Positions 9,271-62,641 of a stretch of 64,000 nucleotides of DNA are shown here, in pieces. The first letter of the stretch is position 1; every line of letters starts with the position of its first letter. A model generated the notes under the pieces. It was not told where the DNA came from, did no database searches, and was given only the letters and a program-made list of their open reading frames with translations. This stretch comes from Convolutriloba macropyga (Eukaryota), in the NCBI RefSeq assembly GCF_964194025.1, contig NC_134482.1, positions 38,874,001-38,938,000 of the forward strand. Direction: 5' to 3'. The position numbers were made by a program, and so were the translations under genes.

Positions 9271-9280
9271 ATCTTATTAT

Positions 9281-10935: not shown

Positions 10936-10939
10936 CATT

Positions 10940-15240: not shown

Positions 15241-15242
15241 GA

Positions 15243-15475: not shown

Positions 15476-15875
15476 TGACAAGTCTTAAATGTGTTATGAT
15501 CATAGCTCTGAATCAGTACTGATACCTAGACTTGCAATTAGACTTGCCCAGTACTGATATTGACTTGGCGTTAAGTACGGGACTGTAACAAAGACAAATG
15601 GTGAATATTCTTTGTCGGTATAACTTTCAATAAAACGTTCAATAAATGAAAATCAAAATTGAACGAGTCAATTTTGTATTTATAATTTTAGCTGGCTGTT
15701 TTTCATTTCAGCTGGAGGTTGGAAAACAAAATTGAAATGCAAATTCAGATTCTGCTTCAATTTTTCTGTTTAACCATGAATCATTGAAATAGTGAAAAAA
15801 TGTTACATTGATCCTTTAAAAAAAGGAAATGAAACTATTTCTCTGGTAATTGATCCAACGTCATCAAACTCAAAC

Positions 15876-16071
15876 CTTGTACGAGAACCATTTCGGCATC
15901 TTTGTTCACTGCTAAACAATCCTGTTTTGTCTTTTCCAGTCCCTCTGCATTGCGACCATTGAGACAGAGTTTTGTGATTCCCTTTTCCACAAATTTCACA
16001 GCCGTCTCTTGTCCTATCCCAGAACTAGCTCCAGTTATTATCAGCACTTTCTCATCAGAGAACAGTTTCAT
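15876..16071 (-). CDS. SDR paralog A, exon 1 only (downstream exons not found in window)
   Basis: MKLFSDEKVLIITGASSGIGQETA...VLVQ G|GTTTGA; TGxxxGIG Rossmann motif; 196 nt like the other exon 1 copies; frame intact. Confidence 0.8.
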
Positions 16072-36592: not shown

Positions 36593-36788
36593 CTTGCACC
36601 AATAAAACTTCAGCATCTTTGTTCACTGCTAGACAATCTTGCTTTGTCTTTTCCAAAGCTTCTGCATTACGACCACTGAGAGACAGTTTTGTGATTCCCT
36701 TTTCCACAAATTTCACAGCCGTGTCCTGTCCTATCCCAGAACTAGCTCCAGTTATAATCACCACTTTCTCATCAGAGAACAGTTTCAT
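36593..36788 (-). CDS. SDR paralog B, exon 1
   Basis: MKLFSDEKVVIITGASSGIG...LLVQ G|GTTAGT; 196 nt; phase 1 matches exon 2 at 21820 across a 14.8 kb intron. Confidence 0.88.
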
Positions 36789-39700
36789 GATTATAACGAA
36801 TTTTCGAACAAAAAGTGTAACTAAACCATTGACAAATATGAACAGATAAATAAGCTTATTGATTGAACAATATTAAAATTATCAGAGCCGAAAAGTTATA
36901 TCAGGTTAAACCAAACAAGCTTTAGCAGTAATTACATTGAATAGTAGAACTGTCGTGAACTTAAAAGTGATCACAAAACGTCTCAACATTATGCAACTAA
37001 AATAATAGCAAAGTGCGATCTACAAATAATTGAAGAGCAACATTTCGATGGCATTATGTTTATTAATGATATTAAGTTAACTGCCGGAATTAAGATTTGA
37101 TCAACTATTTACTCGGAGTAAACTAGCTATGCTATATTTCCTGTGGTTTTTAGAGGTAGGCAACTATATTTTAATTCAGATACTGCAAAAAAATCGAAGA
37201 TAAAAGGAGTCTAAATGCGATTTCGATGCTGTTTCATGGTTTCAGAGAAGTAACTTCTCTTTATATGGGGGATAATTTTTTTCTGGTAGTTAGTTTTTAT
37301 CGAAATTGACCAGGGAACCGACACTTTTAACTAAGAAAAACCCAAATCATTCGAAAGAATTTTGCCTAATATTCGATAATTTTATGCTTAATATATCTCT
37401 ATTACCAGTATACTTATGTTAGTAATTAGATAAACTTTAAGTTAAACTGCACTGGTGCAATCCGCGTTTTGTCCGGCTGAGTTGCTGCTTCAGAATCTAG
37501 AGAAGCAAAAATAAAAAAATTCAAGGTTTGCAGAAACGCTGACCTAAGAAAAGAAATTGAATTGACCCATGAAAAATCTATGCTCAACGCAGAATGCTCT
37601 TGGAAAATTTTTTGCTCGACGCATGAAAAGACTTCTCCTTGACAATGAGTATGAAACAAAACGGTGTATTTTTTTGAATACAGGCCCTCCCCGATGGAGT
37701 TTGAGTTTTTAAGTCAAACCGTAGATCTGTAAAAATGTTTTCAACGTCAAAACGAAACAATGATAAAAGAAAAAAACATTGAAAGAACGACAAAACCACG
37801 CATTTAAAACTTACAGAAATTTGAGAACTCCTGTTATTGGAGTTGAGAAAATTGCTTTTCCTGACGCTCTCTTTTTGTCATTTCTGAAAAAAAAGAGTGT
37901 GTTCCTTGTCAAATGGTGTTTCGAGTTGACAAAATATCACAATCTTGCTTATAGTTCCGGGATTTTTCTGGAACGAAACATAATATTTGTCCATACTTAT
38001 ATCTACTACGAAGTTCATACTTATTTCTACTACCAAAAATATGTTTGCAAAAATTTTTTCCGGAATATTTGTGTCCACCCGATACCAGTTTGTCCAAATG
38101 GGAACATCTCATAAGAACTAAACATATCGGTCAAGGTAAAAAAATTGCAAATTACCACAAATCTTGCAGATGAAGCCATATTTATAATTTATTTTTCTAG
38201 AAAGGACCTTGTAATATTTGAAACCATCTTACAAGAATGTTGCAATACATTAGAAACATCTTGCAAAAATCCTAGATGTTGAATCCGTTTTTTCATTCCC
38301 TTGTCAATAGGATTTTATTCTCAGAAAAAATCTATTGCACCGTTTTTTGCGCTAATTGGCCAACCACTGTACAATCAGAAATGAGTAGTCATAAAGAATC
38401 CTGATGGTGTTTGTTTTCCGAAAAACCAGAAATTTGATTTTTTTTTTGGTCAAAGACAGTCATTGTTTTCATCAAACGCATTTAAAAAACTGAACTAATA
38501 AAGAGTAAATAAATATACTCATACAAGTTATTCTAAAAATTGCAGGGCAACAGAGATCGCTTGCACGAAGTTTGCTATTTCTTTGTCTTTCTTTTGTTCT
38601 GTTCTTTTTAATCAGGCAGATACTTTGAGACATTGTCCCTTAATTCTTTCACGCACGCCTCCCGGATGTAAAGATGTTTTTGAGACCAGATGACATTCTG
38701 AATCATTTCGATCTTTGTTAGCTACGGACCAAGGATGCATCTAGTAAAAATTTGCTCTTGCCAAAACTTAGAGAACTCTTTTTCACTAGTTAAAAAATAT
38801 ACTGTTGCTCGTCATCAACCTTCACAAACACTGTCTCTTCAGTGCAGCGCCTTGCACGTCAACTTTTTCGGATTACTTTTTATTAAACGTTTTTTTCTGT
38901 TGATTTTTTAATAAGTATTTGTCATTTTGAGCAGTTTGCAAAAAAATCACTTTTGGAAACTATGGATATCTATTAAACCATCTTGTAGAGCTTACATGTC
39001 ATTATGTCAATATATTGGATAAAAATCTACTTTAAACAGCGCAACGTTTCTTTTTCATCCTCCATTGTCAAAGTTGAAAAACTGACTTCCAATCTAGTTA
39101 AATAAAATATGTTTTCTCCAGATGGTACAGAGAACTGTTTTTTTAATACTAAAGACTATTGAAATCAGTTTCCTCGAAAAACCCTGTTGTGCGAATTCGT
39201 TTTGATTCTCTTAAGAATCAATTAATATGTTCTGAAAAACATGAAAACCGAACGTTCGTTCCCTTCAATTCAACTTGCTCTGAAATTTTATGCGTTATTA
39301 TTTCATTTTGGAAAAAAATACGCCATAAAAATGCTGACGTGAGCTCATGATTTTTCTTCATTTAGGAAAGAGTCGTATGTGTATATTAATTTTTCTAACA
39401 ATACTGAGCGTAGTTTCTCTTGTATATGTTTTCATCAAACGAAGAGCTCCTATTCTGAACCCAATTCCTTAGAATGAAAACCAAATTATTTTTCAATACC
39501 AGTTTTTTCGGCTGACCTTTTAAAGATTATGTTTATCTCATGCTTTGGCTTTTTGAGCAGCTGGCAGCGGTTTATAGGAAACAATTAGATTTTATTTACC
39601 TTTATAACCACTGATATTTTTATTTTCGTTTTCAGTGACATAATTGAAATCGAAGCGTTTTCCTTTTTTGTTGCCATCCTGCTCTGATCTCGTTGACCAA

Positions 39701-40347
39701 AAAGACATAGTTAAAGTTTAAAACAAGCACTTCTTTTGAATTTTTCCTTTTGCCTCCAGTGTACGTAACGAGTGGCTTTAAGACTCCAGTTGTTGTGGAA
39801 ATGCCTATAAACAGAATGAAATATGGTTCTAGGGCAATAGATAGAAACTGAGAACTAGGAATCAAATTAAATTTATTCAAATTATTGTCTTGGCTAGACT
39901 TCTTCATCAAAAATGTGATCGTTTTTTCCTTCAACTTATTTGTAAGTTGCAGATTGACAGCTTCAAAAGCATTTTTGTATAATTCTTTGGTAATTCGCTA
40001 ATTTTTTTCAATTGATCCAACAAAAAAGTTAAAGTATGAAGTTTACCGGCCTTTTCGTGGTCTGTTTTCTTACCTCTCATTTGAAAGAAATTTGTATTAG
40101 ATAAACTTCGGAAGTCTTTAATGAATAAAAAACAATATTTGTTTCTTGTACAATGATTTATAAAAAGAACTAACTAATTACAATAACTCAAACAGTCCAG
40201 CAAAGATATATTTCAGTTTGTGCAGAAAAAGTTCCAGATATTTTTTATAAATTCTTTTGCAGTCTTCGAAACTTTTGTCCAAGTTTTTCTTCTTCTGTGA
40301 ATATCTATAAGTCACACTAATCATTTTTGCAGCCGACTGTCAGGTTT

Positions 40348-40568
40348 TCACTGAATGACATTTCTGCACGCTAGACCTCCATCTTGTAAAACTGAAGAAC
40401 CGCTTAAGAAATTCGCTTCATCGGATGCTAAGAATACAACCAAATTAGCCACATCTTTCCCAGATCCGTTTCTGCCCAGTGGAGTTTGTTTCCTAAGATT
40501 ATCCCAGTACGGTTCCAAGAATTCCTTGGGAACACCAATGCTCTGCGCGAAATTTGTCTCAATTATCC
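40348..40568 (-). CDS. SDR paralog C, exon 3; whole gene 44532-40348
   Basis: taaag|GG ATA ATT GAG: (G)IIETNF...TPLGR...FLASDEANFLSG...DGG...stop; 221 nt. Confidence 0.9.
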
Positions 40569-41128
40569 CTTTAAATGGTTCAGAACAGGTAAGCAATCAT
40601 TGAATTGTACAGTGTAGGATTTTTATTTAATTTCCTCCCCATGAGAAAGAACGTTCGCATAATTTGAGTTGCGCTGTCAATTATAGTTGGCAACAAAAAT
40701 GAGGCACGTAATCTTAATAAGGTGAAAATTAATTGTCAAGTTTGTTTGTTTAATTGTTAACATTGTTTTACGAAGAAGAAGACATACTGACAACTTTTAT
40801 AACGCGTAAAAGAATTTAGAATTGACAAGCATTTCAAAAATTGGCTAAAAATACCCAATTTTGTTGTAAAAAGTGGAGGCAAGTTATGGTCATCTCAACT
40901 CCTCAACTCGAGGTCCTCGTTCAAAATTGCTTCTATTAGGTCTTTCAAAAACGCACGGAAGAGAGGCGAGGTGCGTGGAAAATTCCATGGAAAATGATCA
41001 ACTGCTAAGTGACCAGATGTTTGTCTAAATCTGATTTTCAGCGAGCCGCATATGATTTTAAGTAAACCTGAAGACGGTCGGTTTTGAAAACCTTATTGAA
41101 TATTCAATGATTGCATGTCAAAACTTCC

Positions 41129-41497
41129 CAGGGCTGATACTATTCGCCCGAATCCCATTTTTGCCCTCCTCAACAGCAATGCACCGCGTGAACATATCGA
41201 GAGCCGCCTTGCTCATAGAATAAAACGAGTGATTCGGCACCGGGTGGGTAGCGAGAATTGAGGAATTGTTCACAATATTTCCTTTGGTTAGTCTCAAATA
41301 GGGTATACAGAGTTTGGTTAACTTGACCGCCACTTTGAGGTTGATGTCAAAAACAGGTTCGTAAGAATCCATTGATGGGTCGCAAAGTGGTACGCCTACT
41401 GACATCCCAGCATTGTTGAATAAAATATCAATTTGACCAAAATTTTCGATAGTCTCTTTCACTAACTTTTCACACACGCCGTCGGTTCGTAGATCAC
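41129..41497 (-). CDS. SDR paralog C, exon 2
   Basis: ggtttag|GT GAT CTA: DLRTDG...NNAG...NNSS...YSMSK...SISP(G); 369 nt; followed by the GG donor GGAAGT. Confidence 0.92.
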
Positions 41498-44333
41498 CTA
41501 AACCGAAATAAAGTTTTATATCCGAAGATAGGTTTTTTCTTAGGATTTTGATTTGGTCACGAATTGTATTTTTATACAAAAATCAAATCTGATTCGAATG
41601 AAGCAAAGATGGTCAAAGATGGCCTCAAACGAGGTCATAGATATTGTGCAATTTTTTGACCGGGGATCCTTCTGAACTATGTAAAGCAATCTGTTGAAAT
41701 CAGTTGAAAATTGGGCTCCATTTCTGTTTTTTTTTTCAATTGTCAGCTTAATGCGCTGAATAGCAATGATAAACTATGGTATCAAAAAACTAGGTACATC
41801 TAGAAAATTTTTCAAAAGCTTCACAAACTTTAAAAAAAAATACAATGTTTTGGATTCAGATCATCAATCTAGTAAGGAGTCATTAGGTTTCAGCTTTTTC
41901 TGAAAATTTTTCTAAAAACTGCGTGTCTCTGTGTAACTGTTGCTCCAAACTTGTTCATAATTTTTCAGATTCTGATCGGGACTATTTATTGACAATTCTT
42001 GTACCTCCAGCACCTTTTTTTGAACATGTTTGGCTTGGATCGTCGAAATGCAGAGCAGCCTCATTTTGAAAAAGAAGTCTTAAAGGTGCATTTTTTGTAA
42101 TTTTTTGTCTTTAAGCGAAAAAGAAGACTTAATTTTTTGCGAAAAAGAAGACTTAAAGGTGCATTTTCTGTGTTTGAAAGTCTGCCAAACAGTTTCCGCC
42201 CCTCTGATTGAATTGCACCCAAAAGTATAGATGATTGCTTGTCCGAACTAGATTTTGTTGTCTGGCCTGTTACTTTTTTGTTATCCTTTGTATGCTTGCT
42301 GTGTACAAGATCTTGATTCTGAGCTGCGCTGCTTTTGTTAGTTCAGCGCCGACGACAGTAAAACAACCACGTTTTCTGTTAAAAACCGAGAAAAAGAGAA
42401 TGAAATCCAGGTTAAAATTTCAACATTTCACGCCTTTTTTTCATGCCTAAGCGCAGATTAAAATTTTCGAGCAAAAGTTACGCTTGAAGAACCAAACTTG
42501 TACGTTGCTTTTTAATACTGAACTGAATTTTGAAAGAAAAGGTCTCTGAAATTACGTTTTCAGCGCTTTCAATTCTTTTCTCACGTTGGGTTCAATCCTT
42601 TTTTTAGCCCTTTTCAAGCTGATTTTTTAGCCTGTTTTCACGACACACGCTAGAAAACGTGAATCTGTTTTCATTATCCCTTTTGATATCGTTTCAAAGG
42701 AAAAGGACTGATATGCGCAAACAGATGATGCAGTAAAAAATTGTAAGGAATTGTAATCATTACTCTATTGCGCAATGAGCAAAATTATTTTTACATTTTG
42801 TCTTGTTTGCGAATTTTCTGCAAAATTTTAATTAAGAGATGTTTATGAGCTGAATTTATTGTAAAGCAATATAACGCTGATCATTTGCATATTTTGGTTT
42901 TTAAAGCTCGTGTCTGGCAGTAATTGGAACTTTTTAAGAGCGCAATCTGATATTTAATTCATCAGATTTTCAGAGAAAGTGTAACATAGTTTTGATTACG
43001 TGAGCAAAAAACAGCTCTTCACTAGTAAAAGGACTTCAAAAATGGCAAATAAAGACTTCAAAAGGAATTCAAATGCTGTTGACTTTCTAGCTAGGACAAT
43101 TGTCGGAAATAAAGTCCATTGTTCAATTTTGCTCAGCAAAGAAGTAAAAACGCTAACTGTGGTTATTCTTAGACAATATTCTTGTCTTCTCCAAAACCAA
43201 TTTTTTTCAATTATGTATTAATCTGGTTATATTCCGTCTTTTTGTTGATACCTAAAAAATACATAGGCTTCCATTTCTTTTAGTTTTAGTCAATCGTATG
43301 AGTAACAGAATTCAGCATTTTTTCTTCCTTCTTTAAGGAAAATAACACCAAAGAAATTTTTACGCTTCATATAACTATGATTTTATTTTTGTTTCAGCAT
43401 GCGAATGCTGTTTCTCCTTTGTGTTACTATTTGTTATATTATGGCAAGTAAATAAAATTTTGTACACTCGTTATAATTAACATTTTTCGTCGCATAATGT
43501 ATGTTGCTCTTTCCTTAGCATCTTAAAAGAATTCTTTTTTAAAATAAAAAATAGTAACAAATACATACAAAGCATTTTTGCTGTTTATCAATCCGCAGCA
43601 TTTCGGAAAACTAATTGGGTTTTGCTTGCTTAAAACTCCGGAAAATTGAATATATCATTTTTTTCTTAAAGTTTCATTGACATCAATTCACTCTTTTACT
43701 TAATTCTCTTTTAAAGCGCCTGTTAGTAAAGTCACATATTTTAACGGTTTCATATAAAGAAGATTTAATCAGACTGCGGATTTCTAAGAATTTTTTTTCT
43801 TCTTCTAAGGGATAATGTTTCAAATATGTAATTATCTTTTCAATTCCTTGCATTGAATCATTTGGTTCTCAGCAAACATTTTTTTGTAAGTCTTGTAGAA
43901 AACTTTTTTTGTCAAATATTTAATATTGAGTGTTTTAATTTGTCTTTCTATGCTCCAACGGTTACCCGTAGATGAAATAGGATCATAACTGTTAATTTTC
44001 AGTGGTTTATTTTTCAGCGGATAGCGTAGATAACGTTAAGGTTAAAGTGCAGAGTTTGCAACAAAACTTGGTATTGACTAGTTCAGATCGTGCCTTCAAA
44101 TTGTGATTTTTTTTCAAAATCAACAAATAAAAAGCTAAATTCTCTACTAGGCTACTACTTAAAGGTTCGTGCGTTGAAAAGTTTTTAAAACCTAAATGTC
44201 TCAATTTTTTAAAGCGTTTTACCAATGCTTCTGAGGTATGGAATTTTGATCCCTTCAGTCTTTGGCTTTGCTCAAATAAAAAAGAACGTTTGGTTACAAA
44301 GTCAAAAGTCAAAAAATTTTACGTTTATCAAAC

Positions 44334-44532
44334 CTTGTACCAGCAACACGTCAGCATCTTTGTTAACTGCTAGGCAGTCCTGTTTTGTTTTCTCCAACCC
44401 TTCAGCATTGCGGCCATTGAGAGATAAATTTGTGATTCCCTTTTCCACAAACTTCACAGCCGTCTCTTGTCCTATTCCAGAACTAGCTCCGGTTATAAGG
44501 ACAACTTTCTCGTTCGAGAATAAGTTCATCAT
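44334..44532 (-). CDS. SDR paralog C, exon 1
   Basis: MMNLFSNEKVVLITGASSGIG...LLVQ G|GTTTGA. Confidence 0.9.
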
Positions 44533-47169
44533 TTTGCTTCGTAGAAGGAATGAAGGGTGATCAAAAGATAAAACTATATGGATAGATCGACCCTTTAAGA
44601 AATTTTACAATTGAATTAGAGTAAAATGATTCAATTGATTCGGTTTGTTCGACTGATTTTGTTGTAGAATTATTTTTACGTATATAAAGCAATAAATAGT
44701 TCTTACACACAGATTTAATTACAAAAGGTCTTGGTAGTTCAACAAAACGCAATGCTGCTTGTTCAAAAAGAGAGTTTAAACGAGTTTAACTTACGCGGTA
44801 CGCCTCCAGATAAACTAATAAGAATTTACGTATACTAAAAATGGTAAAAGTAACAAATTTTGATCTCATCTTCGAATGAAAGTGGTGCGAAAATATCAGC
44901 AATTAGATGTGTTCGCATATTTTTGGTACAAAGACGTAGAATTATTTAGAAGTTTTCTGTTTCAAATAAGCAAATGAAAAAAAAAGATAACGTTTCACTT
45001 TTTTATTATCTTTAAACATTCTGAGTAAGGAGTTTTTCAGAAAAAGAAAAAACGACTATGATTAAATTATCTGCTGAAACACATTGGTCTTTGTTTTGAA
45101 TTTCCTCAAAGAATAAAAGAATTTTACTACCTTTTTTAGTTAAAACATTTCAAAAAATTTAATTTAAGCATTAATTATCAAAAATGTTATCCGTTTTCCA
45201 AATTTTTTACCGCTTTTTTCATAGACAACGGCAAGTTTGATTTAAAAAATATCTTTATTGAACGTGGTGTGAAGATTTATAGTGTTTTCATTTTAATTTG
45301 TTGTTTTGTTTTTTATTTCATTTTGTAGTAAATATTTATAACTGCAATGAAAACGAAAATAAATTATTCTTTTTGCTAGCAAAGCTCGTCGCAATTGTCG
45401 TCTGCTCTAATGTCATTCGCTATTACTCATCCTATTTATGACATTCTTTGGGGAGCAGATCATGTGTGACAAAGCAAAAGTTCATGCTTAGATTGCTATT
45501 AAAATGATTCAATAAATTATTTTAGGAAGTAGAAGAGAGCATTTTGTTAGAAAAAAGCATGAAATGGTTTTTGAAAAAACCACCAATTTGATACGATGAA
45601 AAATAATGGGTCAAGTGCGCTTCACGACATGTGTGACAGGAGAAAAAAATTGGAAAACAATAGTTATCTCAATATGCTGATTATATCGAGTTGCTTTTGT
45701 GGGTTTTTTCGCGTATTTTTGCAGGACAACCGAAAATCAGTGTTGATTGACTCTTTGGCTTTAAGTTTTTTTCTATTTTTCATTTATTGTCATTACCACA
45801 CTTTATGGCCTCTGGAAAATTCAAAATTTTCCCTTTTTGTGTTGTACGGTAGTTTTGGACATTTTATAATTCAACAGGAATGGTGTGGTTTGTAATAATT
45901 AACAAAAATAACCATCACGCCTAAATTGTTTCAATTGGAATGCCTCTCACTTTTATTCTTTTTAAATAAGTTAGAAGAATATGAAATGTTGAATTTTAGA
46001 CATATCTAACCCACTAACAATCTAATCATGAAAGGAGCTCTTTTGGTGAAAATTAGTTTTTGTAAGCTCTCAGTCAGGCAACACATGCAAATTTGAAACC
46101 GATTTCCAAATATTCTCGAAAGATTTTCTGATGATTTCAACTAAGCTAGATATCAGGTCTTTAGCTGTCAATTAAACATAATTGACACGAAGTATATAAA
46201 CAAAAAAAAATAAATCATGTTTTTTCATCACTTCTGCGCGTGTAAATTGCTACCCAATCTTCGCAAAAACTTCAAAGTCTAAATCCTGGCCTTCGCCAGC
46301 TGAAACTTACAAATCGAAATGCCAGTCTTGAATAAGTTTCCAAAACATTGAGGTCGGGAGAACATGGATGCCATCACTGATTGACAACCTCCTAATGGGT
46401 TCACACAGATTGATGTGTTCAACTTTTTAAATCTATAATTCAAAAGATTTTAAAAATTTGTTTTCTAATGGGCTAAAATTTATCTCTCGAGTAGCTAGAT
46501 CATCTGAAAACACCTCAAAAATATGATTGATATCATTGGGTGAAAGTAAGCGAAATGTATTATTTGGTATCAGTTTTCAAGCCCAGAAGTGACATCAAGC
46601 CAAAAAAAAACAGAAAGAAATTTAATTTGTCCATTTTGATTTAAGAAATTAACTTTTGTAAGTTTTAACAAAGTCTTACCCATGACTAGGCAGACTAGCA
46701 ACATTTGTCTTCAGATTTTTCCAATACTGAAAAGGAAAAATTTGCTTTTAGAGCGGTCTAATATTAATATAGGTTTAGCTTAAGGTTTTGTGGTTATTTT
46801 TCGGAATTCGCTTTATCCAAAATTAACGTTTGAAACGAGATGACAAAGTTATATCAAAAACTTTATAAGTAAACAGGTTTTTCCTTTCATTTCAATTTCT
46901 GTTTTCCGTCGTCATTCAAAAATTCATTTTTTACAATTAGAAAAGTTTTTCTGCTGGCTTGATTTCAATTCGCCACCTTTTTCGAATCCTAATGCAGAGT
47001 TAAAATGTTGATATCTGCCGAATTGATTTAACGATGTTTTTAGTATTTTATAATTTCATATAGTTAAAAAAAGTGAAAACGTAGTGAGTCTTGCCTCAAT
47101 TGGGTGAAATAAAATTCCGTTTTTCACATAGGTTATATCAGTCACCTTGCCTCCCCTCCCACCTACACA

Positions 47170-48244: not shown

Positions 48245-48465
48245 TCACTGAAGGAAATTTCTGCATGCAAGTCCGCCATCCAACAAAACCAAACTTCCGT
48301 TCAGGAATTCCGCCTCGTCCGATGCGATGAAAGCGACCAACTTAGCCACATCTTGACAGGTTGCGATTCTTCCAAGGGGGGTGTCCTTACCAACTTTATC
48401 ACAGTACCATTCCATGAGTTCTTTGGATAGTCCGTGTTTCTCGCCAAATGGTGTGTGGACCAATC
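48245..48465 (-). CDS. SDR paralog D, last exon (exon 4); whole gene 62641-48245
   Basis: acgcag|GA TTG GTC: (G)LVHTPFG...TPLGRIA...FIASDEAEFLNG...DGG...stop; 221 nt. Confidence 0.9.
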
Positions 48466-51400
48466 CTGCGTTGTTTTCAGAATTCAATTCGAACCTTTTC
48501 TTTAGAAGTTTACGGATGGAAATGTTTTTTTTAATCAGGCTGAAGATAATTAGAAGAAGCAAACTAGCTTTTGATGTTGTCCTGGATATAACGATAAGTT
48601 AATTTTAGTCTAATTGCATGTCTGATCAGTACTGACTAAGTACAAATATCAGCAGTACTGATTAATGATCAAAATGGGACACGTTTAAAGATTTTTTACA
48701 AAAAAAAAATTGGAATTCACTCCCGAAATTTTTGCTTAAATTATTTTTGAGAAGTCCAACTGACTTGATAGCCGAGTTCCTGAGACGACCATCATAAAGT
48801 TTTTTTTTAAAAAACTGTACGTATAAAAAGCATTGACAACGTCTCGGGAAAATGACTTCTTTAAAATTAATCATCCATTTGTATCTGTTTGTAAGTAAAA
48901 TCATGATAAACAGAAGTAGTTATATTAATCGGTTTCTGCGCTTTTTTTGGTCACCCATTTTTTTTCCGCACAATTCAAAATAGTATTTGCAGTATGCATG
49001 GTATTTGCAGTTGTGCTGTTTGTATGGTCTTGACAGCTAGCTCAGATCACTTAACAACTTGATCAATTAGTGAATTAATAAACAAATTTTAAATTACTTC
49101 TGAATCAAATAAGCTTCACTTCGTGTTAAATATTTTTCAAACAAACTTTTTCAGAATTTCAAAGTTTTAAATTGCTCTGGTCCGTTCAATAAAAACCAAA
49201 TCAGATAAATGAGCAAATTTCATGATAAACAACTAGTAGTTTTGTTTATAAGGCGAAGAAGTAGATGTGTTTAAAGATAGGAACGCAAACAGCAGTTTTA
49301 TCCATTTACAAGAAAATATGTATCTAAAATATTTCAATTTTTTAATCAAGCTACGCAGGCAGCGTTTCAGAAAACAGTTTTGTTTATGGCCCTAGGAACC
49401 GTGCAAAATTTGAAGTGAAGTTTTGTGGTATTAAAATAGTCTGTGTGGTTGACTTTTTGAACTCAAGGAGACCTGATTCATATATGACAAATATGAAAAA
49501 TTGTACCTCATGTTTCTGTGTTTTTAGTTGCCCATCTTTTTCAGCATTCTCGTTCACATGCTTTTGCTCACACATTTGCCTATTTAGAATAATTCAGTTT
49601 ATTTTTAGTTTTGAGAACACTTACATTCCAAAACAAAATATAATTTTTTATTTTTTCAAGAATTAAAATATTGGTTTTTACTAATTCATTATTAAATAGA
49701 GGCAAAAAATTTGGTATTGAGTTTTGTATAAAAAATTAAACGTTATGTTAGATTTAGGAGATTTCATTCAATAAAGTTAAAAGTTAAATATTAAAATGTC
49801 GAGTAAAATTTAAAATTCATCCTTGAGGACCCTAGTTTTTAACTTGAACCCTTGTTCGCGGAGGGTTATTTGTTCAACATGGCATGACTTCAATTTTGGA
49901 AAACTGAAATGAACGTACTGTTGTTAAGTAAACGTTTAAAAACGTATAGTTCTAACGCGTTCTTTTCTTTGAAATTTGCGACAAAATTTGAATTTACTTA
50001 ACTTTTCTGTTGGGTTTCAAAATAGGTAATATATAAAAATTTACACGGCGGGATTAATATCAGCTGTTTCATTGTTGACCTGGTTCAAACGCATGGATAC
50101 TTTTTGGTAGTCTCCATATCTTCTTAGAAACCTCCTTTGCAAGTTTTTCTTTTTGAACAGTACGACGACTATTTAATTTCATAAATCTACAGAAAATACA
50201 TTTCCAGAAAAAAATCTATTCCTCTTTTCTTGAGGGTTAGTTATAAATGTAGTAGACGAAATTGACAACAATTCGGCAAAACCTCTGGAAATCAACGGAG
50301 TCTCCTGATTTGTGAATGAGCGCAAACGGAAAAATTCTAAGGGGTTGACTCAACGCGAGAAGTCCTCGTTCGCATTAAAATTTTTACAGCAGAAGCAGAA
50401 AAACCCGACTGTCAAACTCCGAAAAAACTACCGTCTGAAATAAAAGACTGGGTATTTGGTATGTATTGTTGTCCAAGTAATGGAAAATAATATCCACCAT
50501 AAAGATTTTAAAAAGCGGATTATTCAAGCTAACATTTGAATTCAAATTTGCTTTCATTAATGCGCAAAAAGGGGTCAAACAAATCTGAAAGCGCAACCGA
50601 GATCCGTGGTCCTCTAATTTTTTGTTGACAGGTTGCGTCAAAGTTATTCAATCAAATTTCAGTTTTTTGTAGTCGTAGAGTAAACTCTGCTGACAGATTA
50701 CAAAAAAGCAGAATGACATTACATAGTAAAAGCTGTGGGATAAAATTCACTGAGCAGTGAGATCGTACAATTCTTAAAGATTAGGGATAAGATGATTGAA
50801 TCACTACGAAGTCCAAAACCAAAACGGTTCATCACCGCAAAATTTAAAAAGTTCAAGTTTCAATTTTATTTAAATTTGTCCGTGTTTTTTAAAGCTTTTA
50901 CGCACAAAAACTGAGTTCACGATATTTGGTAAGAGCAACAGAAAAAACCTCAATGAACAGATAAATATACTTTCCCTTTTCATAGACAACAAGCTTGAAG
51001 TAAAATTTTGAGGGGCTCGCATTGACAGCAATTTGAGGACGTGTCAGGGAAAGTTAATCATGCCCTACAAAATAGCCCATAGAATACAAACAATTTAAGC
51101 TATTAAAAAATCTATTCCACAGAAACTATTGAGACTCGTCTAAAACGCCCTGTTATTAGGTCTTTTCCACAACTCAGCAGTTATCATTGACGCATTTGAA
51201 TAAATTTACATCCTTATTGGATCCTTGGAAAAACCGTTAAACTGAGAATTACTGGCAGCATAGACTTAAAATTGAACTTAATAAAGACACAAATGCAGTC
51301 GGAAAATGCTCCACGTAAAACTTCTTTGGAAACAAAATATTAGATTAAGTTCAGAATTCAAAAATGCTTACGATCTGCTTGTACACCGTCATCTGAAGGT

Positions 51401-51895
51401 CCATTAATCACTTGGAAACTTTATGAGTCGAAAAGAAAAAGTTGTGTTAGAACCTAAAATTTGTTTTCAACTGAAAAACAAATTTCAATACTAGATTCCT
51501 GACATTAGAATCAAACAAGAAATTTCCCCAAACTATAGAGAAAGACATTCTTCTTTTCAGTTTTTAAACTAACTCCTTGTTTGTGGAAGGTTAGTTGTTC
51601 TACATGGCGTGACTCTCAATTTGAGAAAACGAATTAGACTTAATAATGTCGGGCTGACGTATGAAAACGTATTTTTTAAAGCGGCTTTTTAAATACGCGA
51701 ATAAATTTGAACTTCAATCCAAACGGAAAAATTCAACTCGTTTTTTTATATACGCGAATAAATTTGAAATTCAATCCAAAATCTGTAATGCCTAAAATAT
51801 GCCAAAATTTTTCCAATAATCATGACTAAACTCCACTTCGTTTTTCAAAGACGATATGTTAGAGAAACATCACTGAGTCCTGAAAACAATCATCC

Positions 51896-52048
51896 CTGGA
51901 TTAACGTTGTTTGCGCGAATCCCGTTTTTTCCCTCCTCGACTGCAATGCATTTTGTCAGCATATCCAGAGCAGCTTTCGACATACAATAGTGGGCATAAT
52001 TTGGCATTGGATTCGTTGCCAGAAATGACGAATTGTTTATAATATTTC
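51896..52048 (-). CDS. SDR paralog D, exon 3 (second half of the ancestral exon 2)
   Basis: atgcag|GA AAT ATT: (G)NIINNSS...YCMSK...RANNVNP(G); 153 nt; 216+153 = 369 nt as in paralogs B and C. Confidence 0.88.
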
Positions 52049-52050
52049 CT

Positions 52051-52390
52051 GCATATTTTCCGTTATTGCCATCCGACCCCGGGTAGACCAAAAGTTGTTA
52101 TATACACAGTTATACAGAATCTGCCATTCCGTAGTATAAATCATCATCAAATACTATAGCCGGAAAATATAAAATTTCTCAGGTGACCGAATTTAGATAC
52201 CGTAATTGAGTGGTAAAAATGGCTCAAATTAACTCAGGTGGTCAATGATTTTGATTGGTTGAAAACTCTCACGGTCCGCTAAGGCATGCCCTGACCTGTA
52301 TGGCATATAGCCTAATAAAGTATTTACCGAAGCAAAAATATGAAACAACTAGGTGGTGGGGGGGGGGGGGGGGCAAAGCGGAAAATATCC
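52051..52390. mobile_element. 340 bp non-autonomous TIR element (MITE) with 8 bp TSD, forming a gained intron in SDR-D (introner-like)
   Basis: TSD TATTTCCT at 52043-52050 and 52391-52398. Imperfect TIRs GCATATTTTCCGTTATTGCC (+, from 52051) and GGATATTTTCCGCTTTGCC (-, from 52390). Absent from the same position in paralogs B and C. Confidence 0.85.
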
Positions 52391-52396
52391 TATTTC

Positions 52397-52612
52397 CTTT
52401 TGTTTTCCTCAAATGGGGAATACAGAGCTTTGTCATTCTGACTGCTGATTTGATGTTGATGTCAAATACAGTATCGAAAACTTCCATCGAAGGGTCGCTT
52501 AATTCGCTGCTAAAACTAGAGCCAGCATTGTTGAACAATATATCCAGTCGACCAAATTTTTCCACTGCTTCGTTTACTATTTTCTCACAAACTCCCTCAG
52601 TTCGTAAGTCAC
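52397..52612 (-). CDS. SDR paralog D, exon 2 (first half of the ancestral exon 2)
   Basis: ttcgttcag|GT GAC TTA: DLRTEGVCE...ILFNNAG...PHLRKTK(G); 216 nt; followed by a GA donor. Confidence 0.88.
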
Positions 52613-52789: not shown

Positions 52790-55400
52790 ATCCATAAGTT
52801 CGGACCGTCCCAGACAAACCATGTATATGTACAGACTGCCCCAGATGGAACGTACCTATGTCCAGACTTTCGTGCGTTCAAAAACATTTGTGCGTTCTTC
52901 ATGCGCTCAAACGTCCCTAAGTCCAAATCGTGCGTTCAAAGTTTCGACAACCCCCAGGTGCGTTCATTTCGGTCAGCACATATCGACTTTCTTTTGGTCT
53001 ATAACCTCACTCTGAGCTTCCTGGAAAAAAAACAACCCAACCCCGACTGTCGGAGAGATCTATTTCTTAACATTCACCTACTGAAATATTCAAAAGATTA
53101 ACACTAAAATAAAAATTACAGAAAATTTTTACCATCAGCGTATTTTAAAAAACCTGACCATGTTTTGTTTCTTGTTTTAAAACCGTCGAAAACGAATTAT
53201 TATCTGAAAAACATCGATTTTTACGATTTCAAAATTGCAAGATATATCAAAGAAAATGAAGCAAAAAAAAATCAATTCAAAAAATTCAATGCCAAAAATT
53301 TTCTATTATTCAACATGCATCTTATTGTGCAATTGCTGTGAGCTGAGCCGGTGATTTGTGAGTTTAAAAAGCTATAAGATAAACTGAGAAAATTTAAATT
53401 TAATTTCTTGAGGTCCCAGACAAAAAGACCATATCTCCAGACTGTTCCGGACAAAACATGTCTATGTCCAGACTGCCCCAGACGGAACGTACCTATGCCA
53501 AGAATCTCTTGTGTGCAAACAATTTTTTGCGTTATTCGTGCGTTCAAATGTCCCTATGTCCAGACTTTCGTGCGTTCAAAGTTTCTTCTTTCAAGACTAT
53601 CGTGCGTCAAAATTGCCTATAATTAGACTATTGTGCGTTCAATCGTGTTTCCAGACCGTGTAATTTTGAAGGCACATCACCCCCTTGTGCGTTCAATTCC
53701 GTCTCTACATATAGACTTTTGGTCTCTGACAATAATGGGGTTTCCCAGAAAAATCAAACCCCGGACAAAGAAATCTATTTCTTGACAATCTCATAATGAA
53801 TTACTCGAAAGTTCAACAAGAAACTAAAAATACATTAATTTTTTACCCTGAACGTAACCTAAAATAACCTGACAATATTTTGCTTCTTTTGAAACCGTCG
53901 AAAACGAAGTATCATCTGAAAAACGTCGACTTTTATTATTTCAAAATTGCAAGGTAAATCGGAGAAATTGAAGCAAAAAAAATCAATTCATAAAATTCAA
54001 AGCTAAAATTTTTTCTATTATTTAACATGCATCTTAATGTACAATTGCTGTCAACTGAGCCGGTGATTTGTGAGTATAACAAGCTATAACAAAAACTAAG
54101 GAACTTTAACTTTAATTTCTTGAGTTCCCAGTCCAAAATTCCATGGACGTCCTCGACAAAATCTTTCTATGTCCACACCGCTCCTGACGCAACATACCCA
54201 AGTCCAGAATTTCGTGCATTCTAGAAAGCTTGTGCGCTCATCGTGCGTTCAAACGTCCCTATGTCCAGACTTTTGCGCGTTCAAAAAATTTCTTTTGCGT
54301 TGTTCATGCGTTCAAATGTCCCTATGTCCAGACTCGTGCGTTCAAAGTTTCTCATGCCTAGAATATCGTGCTTTCAAAGTTTGTAAAGACTATCGTGCGT
54401 TTAAAAGCTATGGGTACAAAAATTTTTGGTCTATCCGGAGTTATTACCATCCGACCCCGGGTTGACAAAAAATTGTTAAATATCCGGTTTTTGAAACTCT
54501 GCCATTACATAGTATAAATTATATCATGGGATACTAAAGCCGTAAACTCTAAATTGTCTCAAGTGAATGCATTCAAATACAGTAATTGAAAGGTAAAACT
54601 GGGTCAATTTAACTCAGGTGGTCGATGATTTTGACTGGTTGTCAACTCCCACGGTAGGTTACCAAACCAAAATATGAAACAACTTGGCGGGGGGGGGGGT
54701 CAAATCGGAAAAGATCCTATTTCCTTTTGTTTTACTCAAACGCGGAATACAATCGTTGAAGAATAAAGTCACTCGTCCCAATTTTTTCCACTGCTTCGTT
54801 TACTATTTTCTCACAAATAACTCCCTCAGTTCGTAAGTCACATGAACGAATGTTAAAATTTATTTTGAAACTAACATATTTTAATTGCATAATTTTTTTT
54901 TAAATCGGTCAGACAAAAAGGATTTTTTTCAATATTATAATTTTGTCAGCATATTTTTTTTGTATTTATTTTAACAATTGGCTAAAAATCAATAGTTTCC
55001 CAAGTTGAGGTCCCAGAACGAGAATCCATATGTCTGGACCATCCGAGACAAAACATGTCTATGTCCAGACTCCACCAGACAGAACACACCTAAGTCCAGA
55101 CTTTCGTGTGTTCCAAAAAAAATGTGCAAAAAATGTGCGTTTTTCGTGCATTCAAACATCCCTATGTCCAGACTTTCGTGTATGCAAACTTCCTTGTGTC
55201 CAGACTATCGTGCGTTCATTCGCATTTCTTGTAATTCTGAGCGCACGATATCCACTTGTGCGTTCCTTTTAGTCTGTACATATCGAATTTCAGTCTAGGA
55301 CCTCAGTCTGGGTTTCCTAGAAAAATCAAACCCCGGTTGAAGAAATCTATTTCTTAACCTTCTCATGCTCAATTACTCGAAAGTTCGACAAAAAGTGAGC
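52790..55400. repeat. Locally duplicated repeat family with TATGTCCAGACTTTCGTGCGTTCAAA subrepeats (about 4 blocks); a related patch lies near 17280-17550
   Basis: Blocks at ~52790-53000, 53410-53720, 54130-54410 and 55005-55320; 53140-53850 resembles 53860-54430. Confidence 0.75.
54440..54850 (-). pseudogene. Decayed duplicate of SDR-D exon 2 plus most of the adjacent MITE intron
   Basis: Aligns by eye to ~52062-52620. About 100 nt of the exon are deleted and the acceptor CAG is mutated to CAT. Confidence 0.85.
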
Positions 55401-56184
55401 TGATTTTACATAAGTACAAGCCTGGCAAATGGTTTGGCCTAAAGTCTGCTCTTGACCAATGTCTGGCCAATGTTCTTGACAGCTGTGTGCTCAGATTCTG
55501 CTTGGTATTGCTGTTCAGTCTGCCCAATCGTCTTGAAAACATTCTGCCTGATGGTCCGGACAACGGCCTAGCCTAGTGTCTTTTCGGTCTGGCGAACGTT
55601 ACGGACAAAGTCGGTTTACTCTGACCAATGGTCGCCAATGTCTGTTTGCTCTGGCCAAGAGCAGCCAAAGTCTGTTCGGTCTGGCCAATAACTAACTGTG
55701 GGTATAGTCGGCCTGGAGCCCCTGTTCCCAATCTAAGTCTTTCAAGCCATTACTCGCCTTGAGTTGCTGACTCCTTCCTTAAGAACAGTTCCAAGAACTT
55801 GGGGGTATAATATAAATATCAAAGTTTTTGTACCAGTTGTTTTTTCATAAAATTATGTTTTTTAGACATTTGGCCACAATTTTACCGTAGCTGGCGCATT
55901 TAAAAAGCTTTCGAACAAGTTCGAAGAAATGCAACTAATAGACTATTACATTACCCAGAAAACACACGTGAAACACAAGAAATCACTGTACCCAGAAAAC
56001 ACAAGTAGTTCTATTATTAGAGAGTCCTTTCATGAATTAAACGTGCTAACAGCAAGCGCTTATAAAAAACGAGCAGGAGTCTGATCACGGCTGAGTATTG
56101 TCTGAATGGGTTTGATCATGACTCATTAAAGTCTGGATGGGTCTGATCATTAACGCCCACCTCAATATTAGTACAGTTTCTCAA

Positions 56185-58160
56185 AAGTGTTGCATTTTTC
56201 TACGGATGCGCTGAATTTGCGCTGAAAAATTGTAAGAAATAAGCTGAAACTTTGCTCTATCTACTTTTCTCTCAAAAGCGCTGAAGTTTTTCTGGAGATT
56301 TGCTGAATTTGCACGGAAACTTTGTAAGAATTGCGTTGAAATCTTATTGTATCTACGTTTTCTTAAGAACGCTGAACTTTCCTACGGATGTGCTGAAATT
56401 GCGCTCAAACTTTGTAAGAAAAGCACTGAAATTTTGTTGTTTATACGTTCTCTTAAAAGCGCTGAATTTTTTTAAGGAAGTTCTGAATTTGCGCTGAAAC
56501 TTTGTAAGAAATGCGCTGAAATTTTATTGTGTTTACGCTTATCTAATAGCACTAAAATTTATTTATGGATGCGCTGAAATTGCGCTGAAAATTTTCTTCG
56601 GATGTGCTGAATGTGCAATCAAATTTTGTAGAAAACGCGCTGAATTTTTATTGTTTTTACGTTTTCTTAAAAGCACTGAAATTTTATTTGGGGAAGTGCT
56701 GAATTTGCCCTGAAACTTTGTAAGAAATGCGCTAAAATTTTTTTGTTTCTTCTTTTTCTTAAAAGCACTGAAATTTTATTTGGGGAAGTGCTGAATTTGC
56801 CCTGAAACTTTGTAAGAAATGCGCTAAAATTTTTTTGTTTCTACGTTTTCCTAAAAGCACTGAAATTTATTTACGGATGCGCTGAATTTTCTCTGAAAAT
56901 TTCTACGGGTGTGCTGAATGTGCAATAAAACTTTGTAAGAAATGTGCTGAAATTTTATTGTTTTTACGTTTTCTAAAAAAGCGCTGATATTTTTTTACAG
57001 ATGCGCTGCTTTGCGCAGAAATTGTGTAAGAAATGCCCTGATTTTTTCTTTTCTCTACGTTTTCTCAATAGCGCTGAACTTTTTCTGCAGATGTGCTGAA
57101 TTTGGGCTGAAACTTTGTTTAAAAAGCGCTGAAATTTTGTTGTAGCTATGTTTTCTCAAAAGCGCTGAATTTTTTTACGGATGTGCTGAATTTGCGCTGG
57201 AACTTTGTAGGATATGCGCTGAAAATCTATTGTATCGACAAATTCTTAAAAGCGCTGAAATTTTCCGCGGATGTGTTGAATTTGCGCTGAAACTTTGTGA
57301 GAGTTGCGCTGAAATTTTTTTGTATCTACATTTTCTTAAAAGTGCTGAAGTTTTTTCACGGATGTGCTGAATTTGCGCTGAAACTTTGTGAGAATTGCGC
57401 TGAAATTTTTTTGTATCTACTTTTATTTAAAAGTGCTGAAGTTTTTTCACGGATGGGTTGAATTTGCGCTGAAACTTTGTAAGATTTGCGCTGAAAGTTT
57501 ATTGTTTTTACGCTTTTCTAAAGGCACTGAAGTTTATTTACGGATGTGCTGAATGTGCGATAAAATTTTGTAGGAAACGCGCTGAATTTTTATTGTGTTT
57601 ACAGTTTCTTAAAAGCGCTGAAATTTTATTTAGGGAAGCGCCGAATGTGCGATGAAACTTGTTGCTTTGAAAATTTATTGTTTTCACGTTTTCTTAAAAT
57701 GGCTGAATTTTTATACGGATGCGCTGAATTTGCGATAAAAATTTGTAAGAAATGAGCTGAAAAAAAGTGCTGAAGCTCTCGCAAGAATTGTACTCAAAAT
57801 GCGCTGAAAGTATGCAGGATGGGATAAATTTGCGCCGAAACTTTGTAAGATTTGCGCTGAAATTTTTTTTTGTATCTACGTTTTCTTAAAAGCGCTGAAC
57901 TTTTCTACGGATGTGCTGACTTTGCGCTGAAATTTTGTAAGATATGCACTGAAAAAAAATGCTGAAACTTTTGCAAGAATTGTACTCAAAATGCGCTGAA
58001 AATATGCAAGAAGTACGCTGAATTTGCGCTGAACTTCTGAAATTTCAGCGCGTTTTCAAAGTTTTGGAGCATTTCAATGTATTAAGCGCTTTTCTTACAT
58101 ATTATCAGCGCATTCAGCGTACTTCTTATAAAAAAAATGCGCTAAAACGGCGCTGACATC
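56185..58160. repeat. ~90 bp degenerate minisatellite of GCGCTGAA motifs (~20 copies) ending in inverted TTCAGCGC-type motifs; probably the interior of a non-autonomous DNA element
   Basis: GGATG(T/G)G anchor at ~57180, 57270, 57361, 57452 and 57543. Confidence 0.88.
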
Positions 58161-62445: not shown

Positions 62446-62641
62446 CTTGAACTAATAAAACTTCAGCATCTTTGTTCACTGCTAGACAATCTTGTTTTGT
62501 CTTTTCCAGTCCTTCGGCATTGCGACCATTGAGACATAGTTTTGTGATTCCCTTTTCCACAAATTTCACAGCCGTGTCTTGTCCTATTCCAGAACTAGCT
62601 CCAGTTATTATCACCACTTTCTCATCAGAGAATAACGGCAT
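62446..62641 (-). CDS. SDR paralog D, exon 1
   Basis: MPLFSDEKVVIITGASSGIG...LLVQ G|GTTTGT; 196 nt; phase 1 matches the exon at 52612. Confidence 0.88.

What the first reader, a model, noticed from the sequence alone, without database searches (positions are those of the whole stretch)
52043..52398. Intron gain caught in the act: a MITE with an 8 bp TSD creates a precise GA-AG intron in SDR-D
Seen: a 340 bp element with ~19-20 bp imperfect TIRs is flanked by the TSD AGGAAATA (gene sense). Splicing AAA G|GAAATA...ATATGCAG|GA AAT removes the element plus one TSD (348 nt, 52396-52049) and restores TKGNI exactly as in paralogs B and C, which lack this intron. Donor and acceptor dinucleotides both come from the duplicated AG|G. 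The TIRs supply the same kind of terminal stem as the GG-AG introns. Unspliced, the element introduces a stop. Established: introners are TIR elements that create introns by co-opting TSDs. Inference: with relaxed donors, TIR insertions at AGG-containing targets become spliceable, linking this element to the origin of the non-canonical class.
Basis: partly seen in the sequence, partly recalled or inferred. Interest (0 to 1): 0.87.

Follow-up and report, generated by a model that had tools for sequence, protein, structure and literature searches.

The report
Transposon insert acting as an intron
A 340-base jumping-gene insertion sits inside the coding sequence of a dehydrogenase gene of the acoel worm Convolutriloba macropyga. 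The gene has stayed under selection since, so the insert is most likely cut out of the RNA as an intron lacking the usual GT start; it is an old, established event of a kind known from a few other organisms, not a fresh one.

Summary
A 340-bp element (52051-52390, minus-strand gene) with paired ends (11/12 core) and a perfect 8-bp duplication AGGAAATA interrupts exon 2 of SDR paralog D. Removing 348 nt (52396-52049, GA...AG) gives an intact 261-codon ORF, gap-free against paralogs B and C, which have empty sites.

The genome is the acoel Convolutriloba macropyga.

No RNA could be examined. Four indirect lines suggest the insert is removed from the mRNA:
- A second haplotype carries the same insert. 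Exons differ at 1/587 sites (synonymous) against 67/4131 non-coding sites (p = 0.002). The element itself differs at 5/340.
- A decayed duplicate (54440-55170) has the same exon/element junction, with non-coding K = 0.23.
- RefSeq calls D protein-coding with 307 aa. Of the two-intron models tried, only exact GA-AG excision plus a nested GT-AG intron 2 gives that length with a canonical intron.
- The element's ends pair (-34 kcal/mol), as do the family's GG-AG introns; the GT-AG introns do not.

"Caught in the act" is wrong: the insertion is old and on both haplotypes. Multi-copy MITE status is untested, and an in-frame GG-AG alternative (342 nt, +2 aa) is not excluded. The same scan noted similar introns elsewhere in this genome.

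The parts
62446..62641 (-). SDR-D exon 1 (ATG to ...VQ, ends in phase 1)
   Evidence: TGASSGIG motif and a canonical donor G|GTTTGT. The exact 67-aa ORF is found on ENA contig ctg35955.
52613..62445 (-). Intron 1 of SDR-D (GT-AG, 9.8 kb); contains the decayed duplicate D'
   Evidence: Its ends show no pairing beyond chance (z = 0.2).
52397..52612 (-). SDR-D exon 2, part before the insert (GDLRTEGV...LRKTK + G)
   Evidence: There are 0/216 differences between the haplotypes.
52391..52398 (-). Target-site duplication, copy 1 (AGGAAATA). The proposed donor is G|GA at 52397|52396.
   Evidence: Position 52391 is A in the window and G in the second haplotype, so this base behaves as non-coding.
52051..52390 (-). 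340-bp non-coding TIR element
   Evidence: No tRNA or Rfam match. Haplotype divergence is 5/340, which is intron-like. The only other copy found is D'.
52379..52390 (-). 5' terminal inverted repeat core GGATATTTTCCG
   Evidence: 11/12 complementary to 52051-52062.
52051..52062 (-). 3' terminal inverted repeat core CGGAAAATATGC
   Evidence: end duplex of -34 kcal/mol, z = -4.5 against shuffles.
52043..52050 (-). Target-site duplication, copy 2 (AGGAAATA). The proposed acceptor AG is at 52050-52049.
52049..52396 (-). Putative GA-AG intron (348 nt = element plus one TSD)
   Evidence: its removal gives an intact ORF; it reproduces the RefSeq product length of 307 aa.
51896..52048 (-). SDR-D exon 2, part after the insert (NIINNSS...YCMSK...NPG)
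   Evidence: There is one synonymous haplotype difference, at 51987.
48466..51895 (-). Intron 2 of SDR-D, GG-AG with paired ends; position shared with B and C
   Evidence: duplex -21 kcal/mol, z = -2.6. Haplotype divergence is 57/3403.
48245..48465 (-). SDR-D exon 3 with stop codon
   Evidence: The RefSeq CDS ends at 48245. There are 0/218 haplotype differences.
54440..55170 (-). D': decayed partial duplicate of intron-1 tail, exon 2a and the element, with the same exon/element junction. The acceptor AG has become AT, 103 nt of exon are deleted, and the element's 3' TIR is truncated.

Best explanation
A non-autonomous DNA transposon with terminal inverted repeats inserted into exon 2 of SDR paralog D of Convolutriloba macropyga, at the target AGGAAATA, which was duplicated. 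The gene was not killed. The insert is most likely removed from the pre-mRNA as an intron with a non-GT start and an AG end.

The register that restores the ancestral protein exactly is G|GA...AG|G (52396-52049). In that register the donor comes from TSD copy 1 and the acceptor from TSD copy 2. The former TIRs pair and bring the two sites together, as in the older GG-AG introns of the same gene family.

What is shown: the insertion anatomy, the empty paralog sites, the end pairing, the age, and the selective constraint after insertion. What is inferred: the splicing itself, the exact donor, and a role for the stem. The confidence given (0.55) is for this exact GA-AG register; removal by splicing in either in-frame register is about 0.75.
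For: 1. Conceptual removal gives a 261-codon ORF, gap-free against B and C, with TGxxxGIG, NNAG, the NNSS serine, YxxxK and PG all intact.

2. A second haplotype (ENA ctg38019, locus L003) has the element at the same site. Exons 2a+2b+3 differ at 1/587 sites, and that change is synonymous. Non-coding DNA differs at 67/4131 sites (Fisher p = 0.0024). Under neutrality about 7.1 non-synonymous changes are expected and 0 are seen (P = 8e-4). The element itself diverges like an intron, at 5/340.

3. The decayed duplicate D' shares the junction, so the insertion predates it. Non-coding K2P is 0.23 against 0.098 in the exon. Of 7 exon changes that could be assigned to a lineage, 0 fall on D. If D had evolved neutrally for that long, an open frame would survive stop-creating substitutions with P about 0.05. 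The indel load seen in non-coding DNA lowers that further.

4. RefSeq (Gnomon) calls D a protein-coding gene of 307 aa ending at 48245. Among two-intron G*-AG models that keep the SDR frames, only exact excision 52396-52049 together with a nested canonical GT-AG at 51873-48582 in intron 2 gives 307 aa with a canonical intron. Nesting a canonical intron inside the GG-AG intron is what RefSeq demonstrably did in paralog P0151. A canonical in-frame alternative inside the element (GT at 52327) exists, but no tested model combining it with a second intron gives 307 aa: 284 or 330 aa with the two obvious intron-2 choices, and it is absent from the solutions.

5. The terminal duplex of the element is -34 kcal/mol (z = -4.5). 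The GG-AG introns of B, C and D score z = -2.5 to -3.3. The three GT-AG introns score z about 0.

6. RefSeq models A (P0153) and B are 261 aa, meaning exact GG-AG splicing is accepted in this genome's annotation.
Against: No transcript of D was found, so there is no direct junction evidence. The protein collections hold no D-like product of 40-128 aa or 155-492 aa, but they also hold no transcript-derived product of any paralog in this cluster.

The RefSeq junction is inferred from a product length, not read from the record. It could also rest on protein homology rather than RNA. RefSeq did not use the exact GG-AG intron 2 for D, which argues against good RNA-seq support for this gene.

The element contains strong canonical donor-like sites (CGG|GTAAAT at 52327, CAG|GTCAGG at 52295) that could compete with the proposed donor. 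Use of 52295 with the 52049 acceptor would give a premature stop.

The GA donor lacks the GG seen in the confirmed non-canonical introns here.

The exon-versus-intron diversity contrast could be somewhat inflated by alignment noise in AT-rich introns. Exons against the element alone is 1/587 versus 5/340.
Confidence: 0.55

Rival explanations
1. The insert is spliced, but at the element's own first bases as a GG-AG intron (52390-52049, 342 nt). This leaves six extra bases, so the protein reads TKGN-RN-IINN in the window haplotype and TKGN-GN-IINN in the other.
For: It is in frame and open. GG is the donor class seen in the family's own intron 2 (G|GGAAAT, G|GGAAGT, G|GGATGA) and in other notes on this genome. 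In the second haplotype the site reads ATG|GGATCT, close to C's CTG|GGAAGT.
Against: To reach the RefSeq length of 307 aa, this register needs a GA donor for the nested intron 2, which is implausible for an ab initio join. It puts a 2-aa insertion next to the conserved strand carrying the catalytic serine. The base before the donor is A in the window haplotype, not G.
Confidence: 0.2
2. This is a plain inactivating insertion. SDR-D is a pseudogene, or is becoming one, and the element is simply retained or the gene is silent. The resemblance to an intron is a by-product of the TSD.
For: Any TIR/TSD insertion restores the ORF when the element and one TSD are removed. No D transcript was found. 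The family is large and redundant, with at least 7 paralogs. Strong internal canonical donors could derail splicing.
Against: The ORF is intact over 261 codons even though the insertion is older than a duplicate with K = 0.23. Haplotype differences are about ten times rarer in exons than in flanking non-coding DNA, and the only exon change is synonymous. All assignable changes since the duplication fall on D', not D. The stem of D's intron 2 is still present. RefSeq calls D protein-coding.
Confidence: 0.15
3. The element is removed by a non-spliceosomal, structure-dependent pathway of the kind proposed for euglenid nonconventional introns, with the hairpin rather than the dinucleotides defining the cut sites.
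For: End pairing is very strong. The proposed junctions lie in a direct repeat, as is reported for euglenid nonconventional introns and Amoebophrya introners (PMC11282704, PMC7789003).
Against: Every non-canonical intron seen here keeps a 3' AG and a 5' G. That points to a permissive U2-type spliceosome, as in larvaceans. Nothing tested here addresses the machinery.
Confidence: 0.05

Closest known systems
Introner elements / MITE-derived introns of Micromonas, Aureococcus and other eukaryotes (reviewed in PMC11282704, which cites Gozashti et al. 2022)
   Same: A short non-autonomous TIR element with a TSD sits inside a coding exon. One or both splice sites are supplied by the duplicated target. 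Removal of the element plus one TSD restores the message.
   Different: For Aureococcus, PMC7789003 reports canonical splicing motifs and repeats of constant length; PMC11282704 reports a 3-nt TSD for Micromonas. That classical introners form large, near-identical families is my own recollection, not read here. This element has a proposed GA (or GG) donor, an 8-bp TSD, and only one insertion event has been seen so far.
MITE-derived non-canonical introns of the larvacean Fritillaria borealis (Henriet et al. 2019, as summarised in PMC11282704 and PMC13326754)
   Same: An animal genome in which TIR-bearing insertions in genes are tolerated because the spliceosome removes introns that break the GT rule. 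The non-canonical introns are lineage-specific, and the introns show inverted terminal repeats (PMC11282704).
   Different: The prevalent termini in Fritillaria are AG-AC and AG-AT, and fewer than 10% of its introns are GT-AG. Here the 3' AG and the 5' G are kept (GG-AG, GA-AG), and GT-AG introns coexist in the same gene. The host is an acoel, not a tunicate.
G*-AG introns of Oikopleura dioica
   Same: The same dinucleotide class: GA-AG, GG-AG and GC-AG handled by a permissive major spliceosome.
   Different: I know of no transposon scar (TIR plus TSD) or terminal stem reported as a general feature there. The phylum is different.
Introner elements of Amoebophrya and nonconventional introns of euglenids (PMC7789003, PMC11282704)
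   Same: Non-canonical borders, 8-20 nt inverted repeats that pair the intron ends, and short direct repeats overlapping the exon/intron boundaries.
   Different: Those are protists with highly variable borders and, for euglenids, probably a different excision pathway. Their direct repeats are 3-5 nt. Here there is an 8-bp TSD and a conserved G...AG.

Membership tests
Transposon-derived (introner-type) spliceosomal intron | Transposon scar: terminal inverted repeats and a target-site duplication at a site that is empty in homologues | tested here: met
   An 8/8 TSD, an 11/12 TIR core, and empty sites in B, C and three other paralogs.
Transposon-derived (introner-type) spliceosomal intron | The element is removed from the mature mRNA | tested here: inconclusive
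   No transcript was available. Indirect support comes from post-insertion constraint and from the RefSeq length of 307 aa matching exact excision.
Transposon-derived (introner-type) spliceosomal intron | Splice sites supplied by the TSD or the element ends | tested here: met
   By sequence, the only exact register ending in AG takes GA from TSD copy 1 and AG from TSD copy 2. Whether these sites are used in vivo was not shown.
Transposon-derived (introner-type) spliceosomal intron | Member of a multi-copy family with many independent genic insertions | tested here: inconclusive
   Only D and its duplicate D' were found in the window plus about 40 kb of other loci, on both haplotypes. The 1.18-Gb genome could not be searched.
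MITE of the hAT, P or Merlin superfamily | 8-bp target-site duplication | tested here: met
   Exactly 8 bp; the ninth base differs on both sides.
MITE of the hAT, P or Merlin superfamily | Superfamily-typical terminal motif (hAT YARNG; P CATG...; Merlin GG...) | tested here: inconclusive
   The termini are GGAT(A/C)TTTTCCG and GCATATTTTCCG. These do not fit YARNG. The GG start fits Merlin only by my recollection of that family.
MITE of the hAT, P or Merlin superfamily | Autonomous partner with matching TIRs encoding the transposase | not testable with these tools
   The acoel genome is not in any DNA collection that can be scanned here.
Hairpin-ended G*-AG introns of this genome (SDR intron 2, and the INTS4, RPE and HSP70 notes) | 5' G, 3' AG, no GT, and intron ends that pair beyond chance | tested here: met
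   the element scores z = -4.5; intron 2 of B, C and D scores z = -2.5 to -3.3; the GT-AG introns score about 0. The donor would be GA rather than GG.
Fritillaria-type non-canonical introns | Prevalent AG-AC / AG-AT termini | tested here: not met
   The termini here are GA/GG...AG.

The most novel reading that the evidence does not exclude
Acoels have independently evolved a splicing system that removes hairpin-ended transposon insertions from coding exons whatever the second base of the donor. This locus would preserve the birth certificate of one such intron: TSD, TIRs, empty paralog sites, a dead duplicate as a neutral control, and two haplotypes. If so, the origin of a whole class of non-canonical animal introns, and a structure-assisted choice of splice site, becomes directly testable outside tunicates.
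Probability: 0.4. Interest if true: 0.8.

Novelty: new member of a known kind. Interest (0 to 1): 0.6.

Why it matters
Introns born from transposons, and spliceosomes that tolerate non-GT donors, are documented in a few algae, protists and larvacean tunicates. Full-text searches here found nothing on this for acoels.

This locus is an unusually legible example. The transposon scar is intact and paralogs give the empty site. A decayed duplicate and a second haplotype provide internal neutral controls. Older GG-AG introns with the same end-pairing architecture sit in the same genes.

If RNA data confirm the junction, the locus shows how a TSD containing AG|G can supply both splice sites under a relaxed donor rule. 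It also flags a practical problem: RefSeq models in this genome are often wrong at such introns.

Tried and rejected
1. Transcript evidence through the protein collections. A search with full-length paralog P0003, with D exon 2a and with D exon 3 found no transcript-derived D product. It found no Logan product of any paralog of this cluster either, so the blank says nothing about expression.

2. Reading the RefSeq D protein directly. It is not returned by the searches. I only have its length and CDS end and reconstructed the model by enumeration.

3. tRNA or Pol III content of the element, prompted by other notes on this genome: none found.

4. Other copies of the element: none in the window or in loci L001-L005 apart from D and D'.

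5. N-terminal extension as the source of the 46 extra RefSeq residues: rejected. A stop lies 31 codons upstream of the ATG and there is no in-frame ATG between.

6. An exact GG-AG intron 2 combined with a 210-nt intron inside the element: no pair with usable splice sites.

7. Fritillaria or Oikopleura as the source organism: rejected once the hits named Convolutriloba macropyga.

8. Whole-intron fold: only z = -1.8. The signal is in the ends.

Full report
**What is there**

The window is AT-rich eukaryotic DNA (33% GC). It carries a tandem cluster of short-chain dehydrogenase/reductase (SDR) genes, all on the minus strand.

Each gene has three exons:
- Exon 1 is 196 nt and runs from the ATG to ...VQ. 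Its donor is canonical, G|GT.
- Exon 2 is 369 nt, from GDL... to ...NPG.
- Exon 3 runs to the stop.

Intron 1 is GT-AG. Intron 2 starts GG and ends AG in B, C and D, at the same position in all three.

Conceptual splicing gives 261-residue proteins for B, C and D. They align without a gap and keep TGxxxGIG, NNAG, the NNSS serine, YxxxK and PG.

**The observation**

On the gene strand, AGGAAATA occurs at 52398-52391 and again at 52050-52043, with exactly 340 bp between. The element begins GGATATTTTCCG and ends CGGAAAATATGC. This is an 11/12 inverted-repeat core that extends imperfectly.

Taking out 52396-52049 (348 nt, GA...AG) gives ...LRKTKGNIINNSS... If the element is left in, the reading frame hits stops.

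B and C are uninterrupted at this site. So are the genomic ORFs of three further paralogs.

The finding is therefore accurate as a description. Two qualifications apply. First, restoring the ORF by removing the element plus one TSD is true of every such insertion. Second, the TSD means only one register (GA-AG) is both exact and ends in AG.

**Organism and annotation**

Protein searches place the window in the acoel Convolutriloba macropyga:
- XP_075262557.1 equals paralog C's exons 1+2.
- Locus L001 from OZ077313.1 is 100% identical to window 54532-31118.
- The genome is 1.18 Gb (PMC13650328).

RefSeq calls B as 261 aa, which means exact GG-AG splicing. It calls C as 192 aa, truncated by reading into the GG-AG intron. 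It calls D as a protein-coding gene of 307 aa whose CDS ends at 48245.

I could not retrieve the 307-aa sequence, so I enumerated gene models. Among two-intron models with G*-AG borders that keep the SDR frames, six give 307 aa. Only one of these contains a canonical intron: exact excision 52396-52049 together with a GT-AG intron 51873-48582 nested inside the true intron 2.

Nesting a canonical intron inside the GG-AG intron is what RefSeq did in paralog P0151, where I mapped the exons (AAC|GTCATT ... TTAAG|).

A canonical in-frame intron inside the element also exists (GT at 52327 to the AG at 52049). With it the product would be 284 or 330 aa with the two obvious intron-2 choices, and it does not appear among the two-canonical-intron solutions. 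So RefSeq most likely removed the element exactly.

Whether that choice rests on RNA-seq or on protein homology is unknown. RefSeq did not use the exact GG-AG intron 2 for D, which suggests that RNA support for this gene is thin.

**Age of the insertion**

Upstream, inside intron 1, lies a decayed partial duplicate, D' (54440-55170). It holds the tail of intron 1, a shortened exon 2a, the identical AGGAAATA|GGAT junction and most of the element.

In D' the acceptor AG has become AT, 103 nt of exon are deleted, and the duplication breakpoint cuts the 3' TIR.

The insertion therefore predates this duplication. Non-coding divergence between D and D' is 118/589 sites (K2P about 0.23). The shared exon part differs at 11/120 sites (0.098; Fisher p = 0.004).

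Using B and C as outgroups, 7 of the 11 exon differences fall on D', none on D, and 4 are ambiguous. Six of the seven cluster next to the deletion and may not be independent events.

If D had drifted neutrally for half that divergence, simulation gives about a 5% chance of no stop codon. The indel rate seen in non-coding DNA is 8 events per 589 nt, which makes an intact frame less likely still.

**A second haplotype**

An ENA assembly (ERZ25071359) holds two contigs for this region.
- ctg35955 matches the window at 99.99%.
- ctg38019 (L003) is a diverged second copy of the locus. It is most likely the other haplotype, though possibly another individual.

L003 carries both D' and D, with the element at the same site.

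| Region | Differences between the two copies |
|---|---|
| Exon 2a | 0/216 |
| Exon 2b | 1/153 (TAT to TAC, synonymous) |
| Exon 3 | 0/218 |
| Putative intron | 5/340, plus a poly-C length change |
| Intron 2 | 57/3403 |
| Tail of intron 1 | 5/388 |

(All.)

Exons against non-coding DNA is 1/587 versus 67/4131 (Fisher p = 0.0024). About 7 non-synonymous changes are expected under neutrality and none is seen (P = 8e-4).

Both copies carry the element, so all of this constraint acted on a gene that contains it. The element itself evolves like intron.

With D' as the outgroup, the two polymorphisms at the 5' end can be assigned:
- G at 52391 (intron position +6) is derived in L003.
- A at 52386 is derived in the window haplotype, and it improves pairing with the 3' arm.

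**Structure**

The first and last 45 nt of the putative intron form a duplex of -34 kcal/mol (z = -4.5 against shuffles). Intron 2 of B, C and D gives z = -2.5 to -3.3. The three GT-AG introns give z about 0.

**Interpretation**

The most likely reading is a transposon-derived intron. A TIR element with an 8-bp TSD landed in a coding exon. It is now removed from the pre-mRNA by a spliceosome that tolerates G-not-T donors, with the ends held together by the former TIRs.

I put about 0.75 on removal by splicing. This splits into about 0.55 for the exact GA-AG register and about 0.2 for the in-frame GG-AG register, which leaves two extra residues. About 0.15 goes to a plain inactivating insertion.

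Evidence against efficient exact splicing:
- The element contains two good canonical donor-like sites (52327 and 52295).
- There is no direct RNA evidence at all.

- 'Caught in the act' is wrong. The insertion is on both haplotypes, and it is older than a duplicate that has since diverged by about 23%.
- 'MITE' as a multi-copy family, the hAT/P assignment, and the proposed link to the origin of the whole non-canonical class are untested. Only this one insertion event was seen in roughly 100 kb, and the genome cannot be scanned with these tools.

**Comparison with what is known**

Transposon-born introns that take splice sites from the TSD are established in Micromonas, Aureococcus and others. 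MITE-derived non-canonical introns are described in Fritillaria borealis, mostly with AG-AC or AG-AT termini. Hairpin-ended introns with boundary direct repeats are described in Amoebophrya and euglenids (PMC11282704, PMC13326754, PMC7789003).

The G*-AG class is known from Oikopleura (my own knowledge, not read here).

Full-text searches found nothing on non-canonical introns or introners in acoels.

Other notes of this scan report GG-AG introns with paired ends elsewhere in this genome. One follow-up states exact removal from RNA for such an intron in INTS4. I did not check those notes myself.

I therefore file this as a new member of a known kind, in a new animal lineage, with an unusually complete set of internal controls.

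Noticed in passing
window 41118-44532 (C); locus L005 3001-5475 (P0151): RefSeq models mishandle the GG-AG intron 2 of this SDR family. C is truncated to 192 aa by reading into the intron. P0151, P0003 and P0152 carry 17-27 spurious residues; for P0151 I mapped these to a canonical GT-AG intron nested inside the real one (P0003 and P0152 were not mapped). Only A and B (261 aa) are spliced exactly.
   Followed up: partly
window 62446-62641, 44334-44529, 36593-36788, 15876-16071: Exon 1 of the four paralogs is much more alike than exons 2 and 3. For example, B-D dS is 0.41 in exon 1 but above 1.2 elsewhere. This suggests gene conversion confined to exon 1.
   Followed up: partly
window 25674-29866 and 31118-35305: A segmental duplication of about 4.2 kb at 97% identity lies inside the 15-kb intron 1 of paralog B.
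   Followed up: no
window 56177-57954: A satellite array with a unit of about 91 bp (74-87% matches, about 20 copies) lies in intron 1 of SDR-D. The second haplotype is highly variable here.
   Followed up: no
window 52850-53000, 53400-54400, 55000-55400: Dispersed repeats of a '...GAACGCACGAAAGTCTGGACATAGG...' unit flank D' and the start of exon 2. They may have mediated the D/D' duplication.
   Followed up: no
window 39600-44700 versus L003 14400-20030: Divergence between the two haplotype contigs is very uneven. It is about 1.6% in non-coding DNA around D, but 6-13% in introns and 2-5% in exons around paralog C. The 'C' copies may not be strict alleles.
   Followed up: partly
window 52295 and 52327 (minus strand): There are two strong canonical donor-like sites inside the element (CAG|GTCAGG and CGG|GTAAAT). 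The second would give an in-frame GT-AG intron that leaves 23 element-encoded residues.
   Followed up: partly
window 1-16071 and beyond the window start: Paralog A (XP_075263236.1) has exon 1 in the window, but its exon 2 lies about 18 kb before the window start. Its intron 1 is therefore about 34 kb.
   Followed up: partly
window 10046-10712: Three runs of N (550 bases in total). They were left untouched.
   Followed up: no
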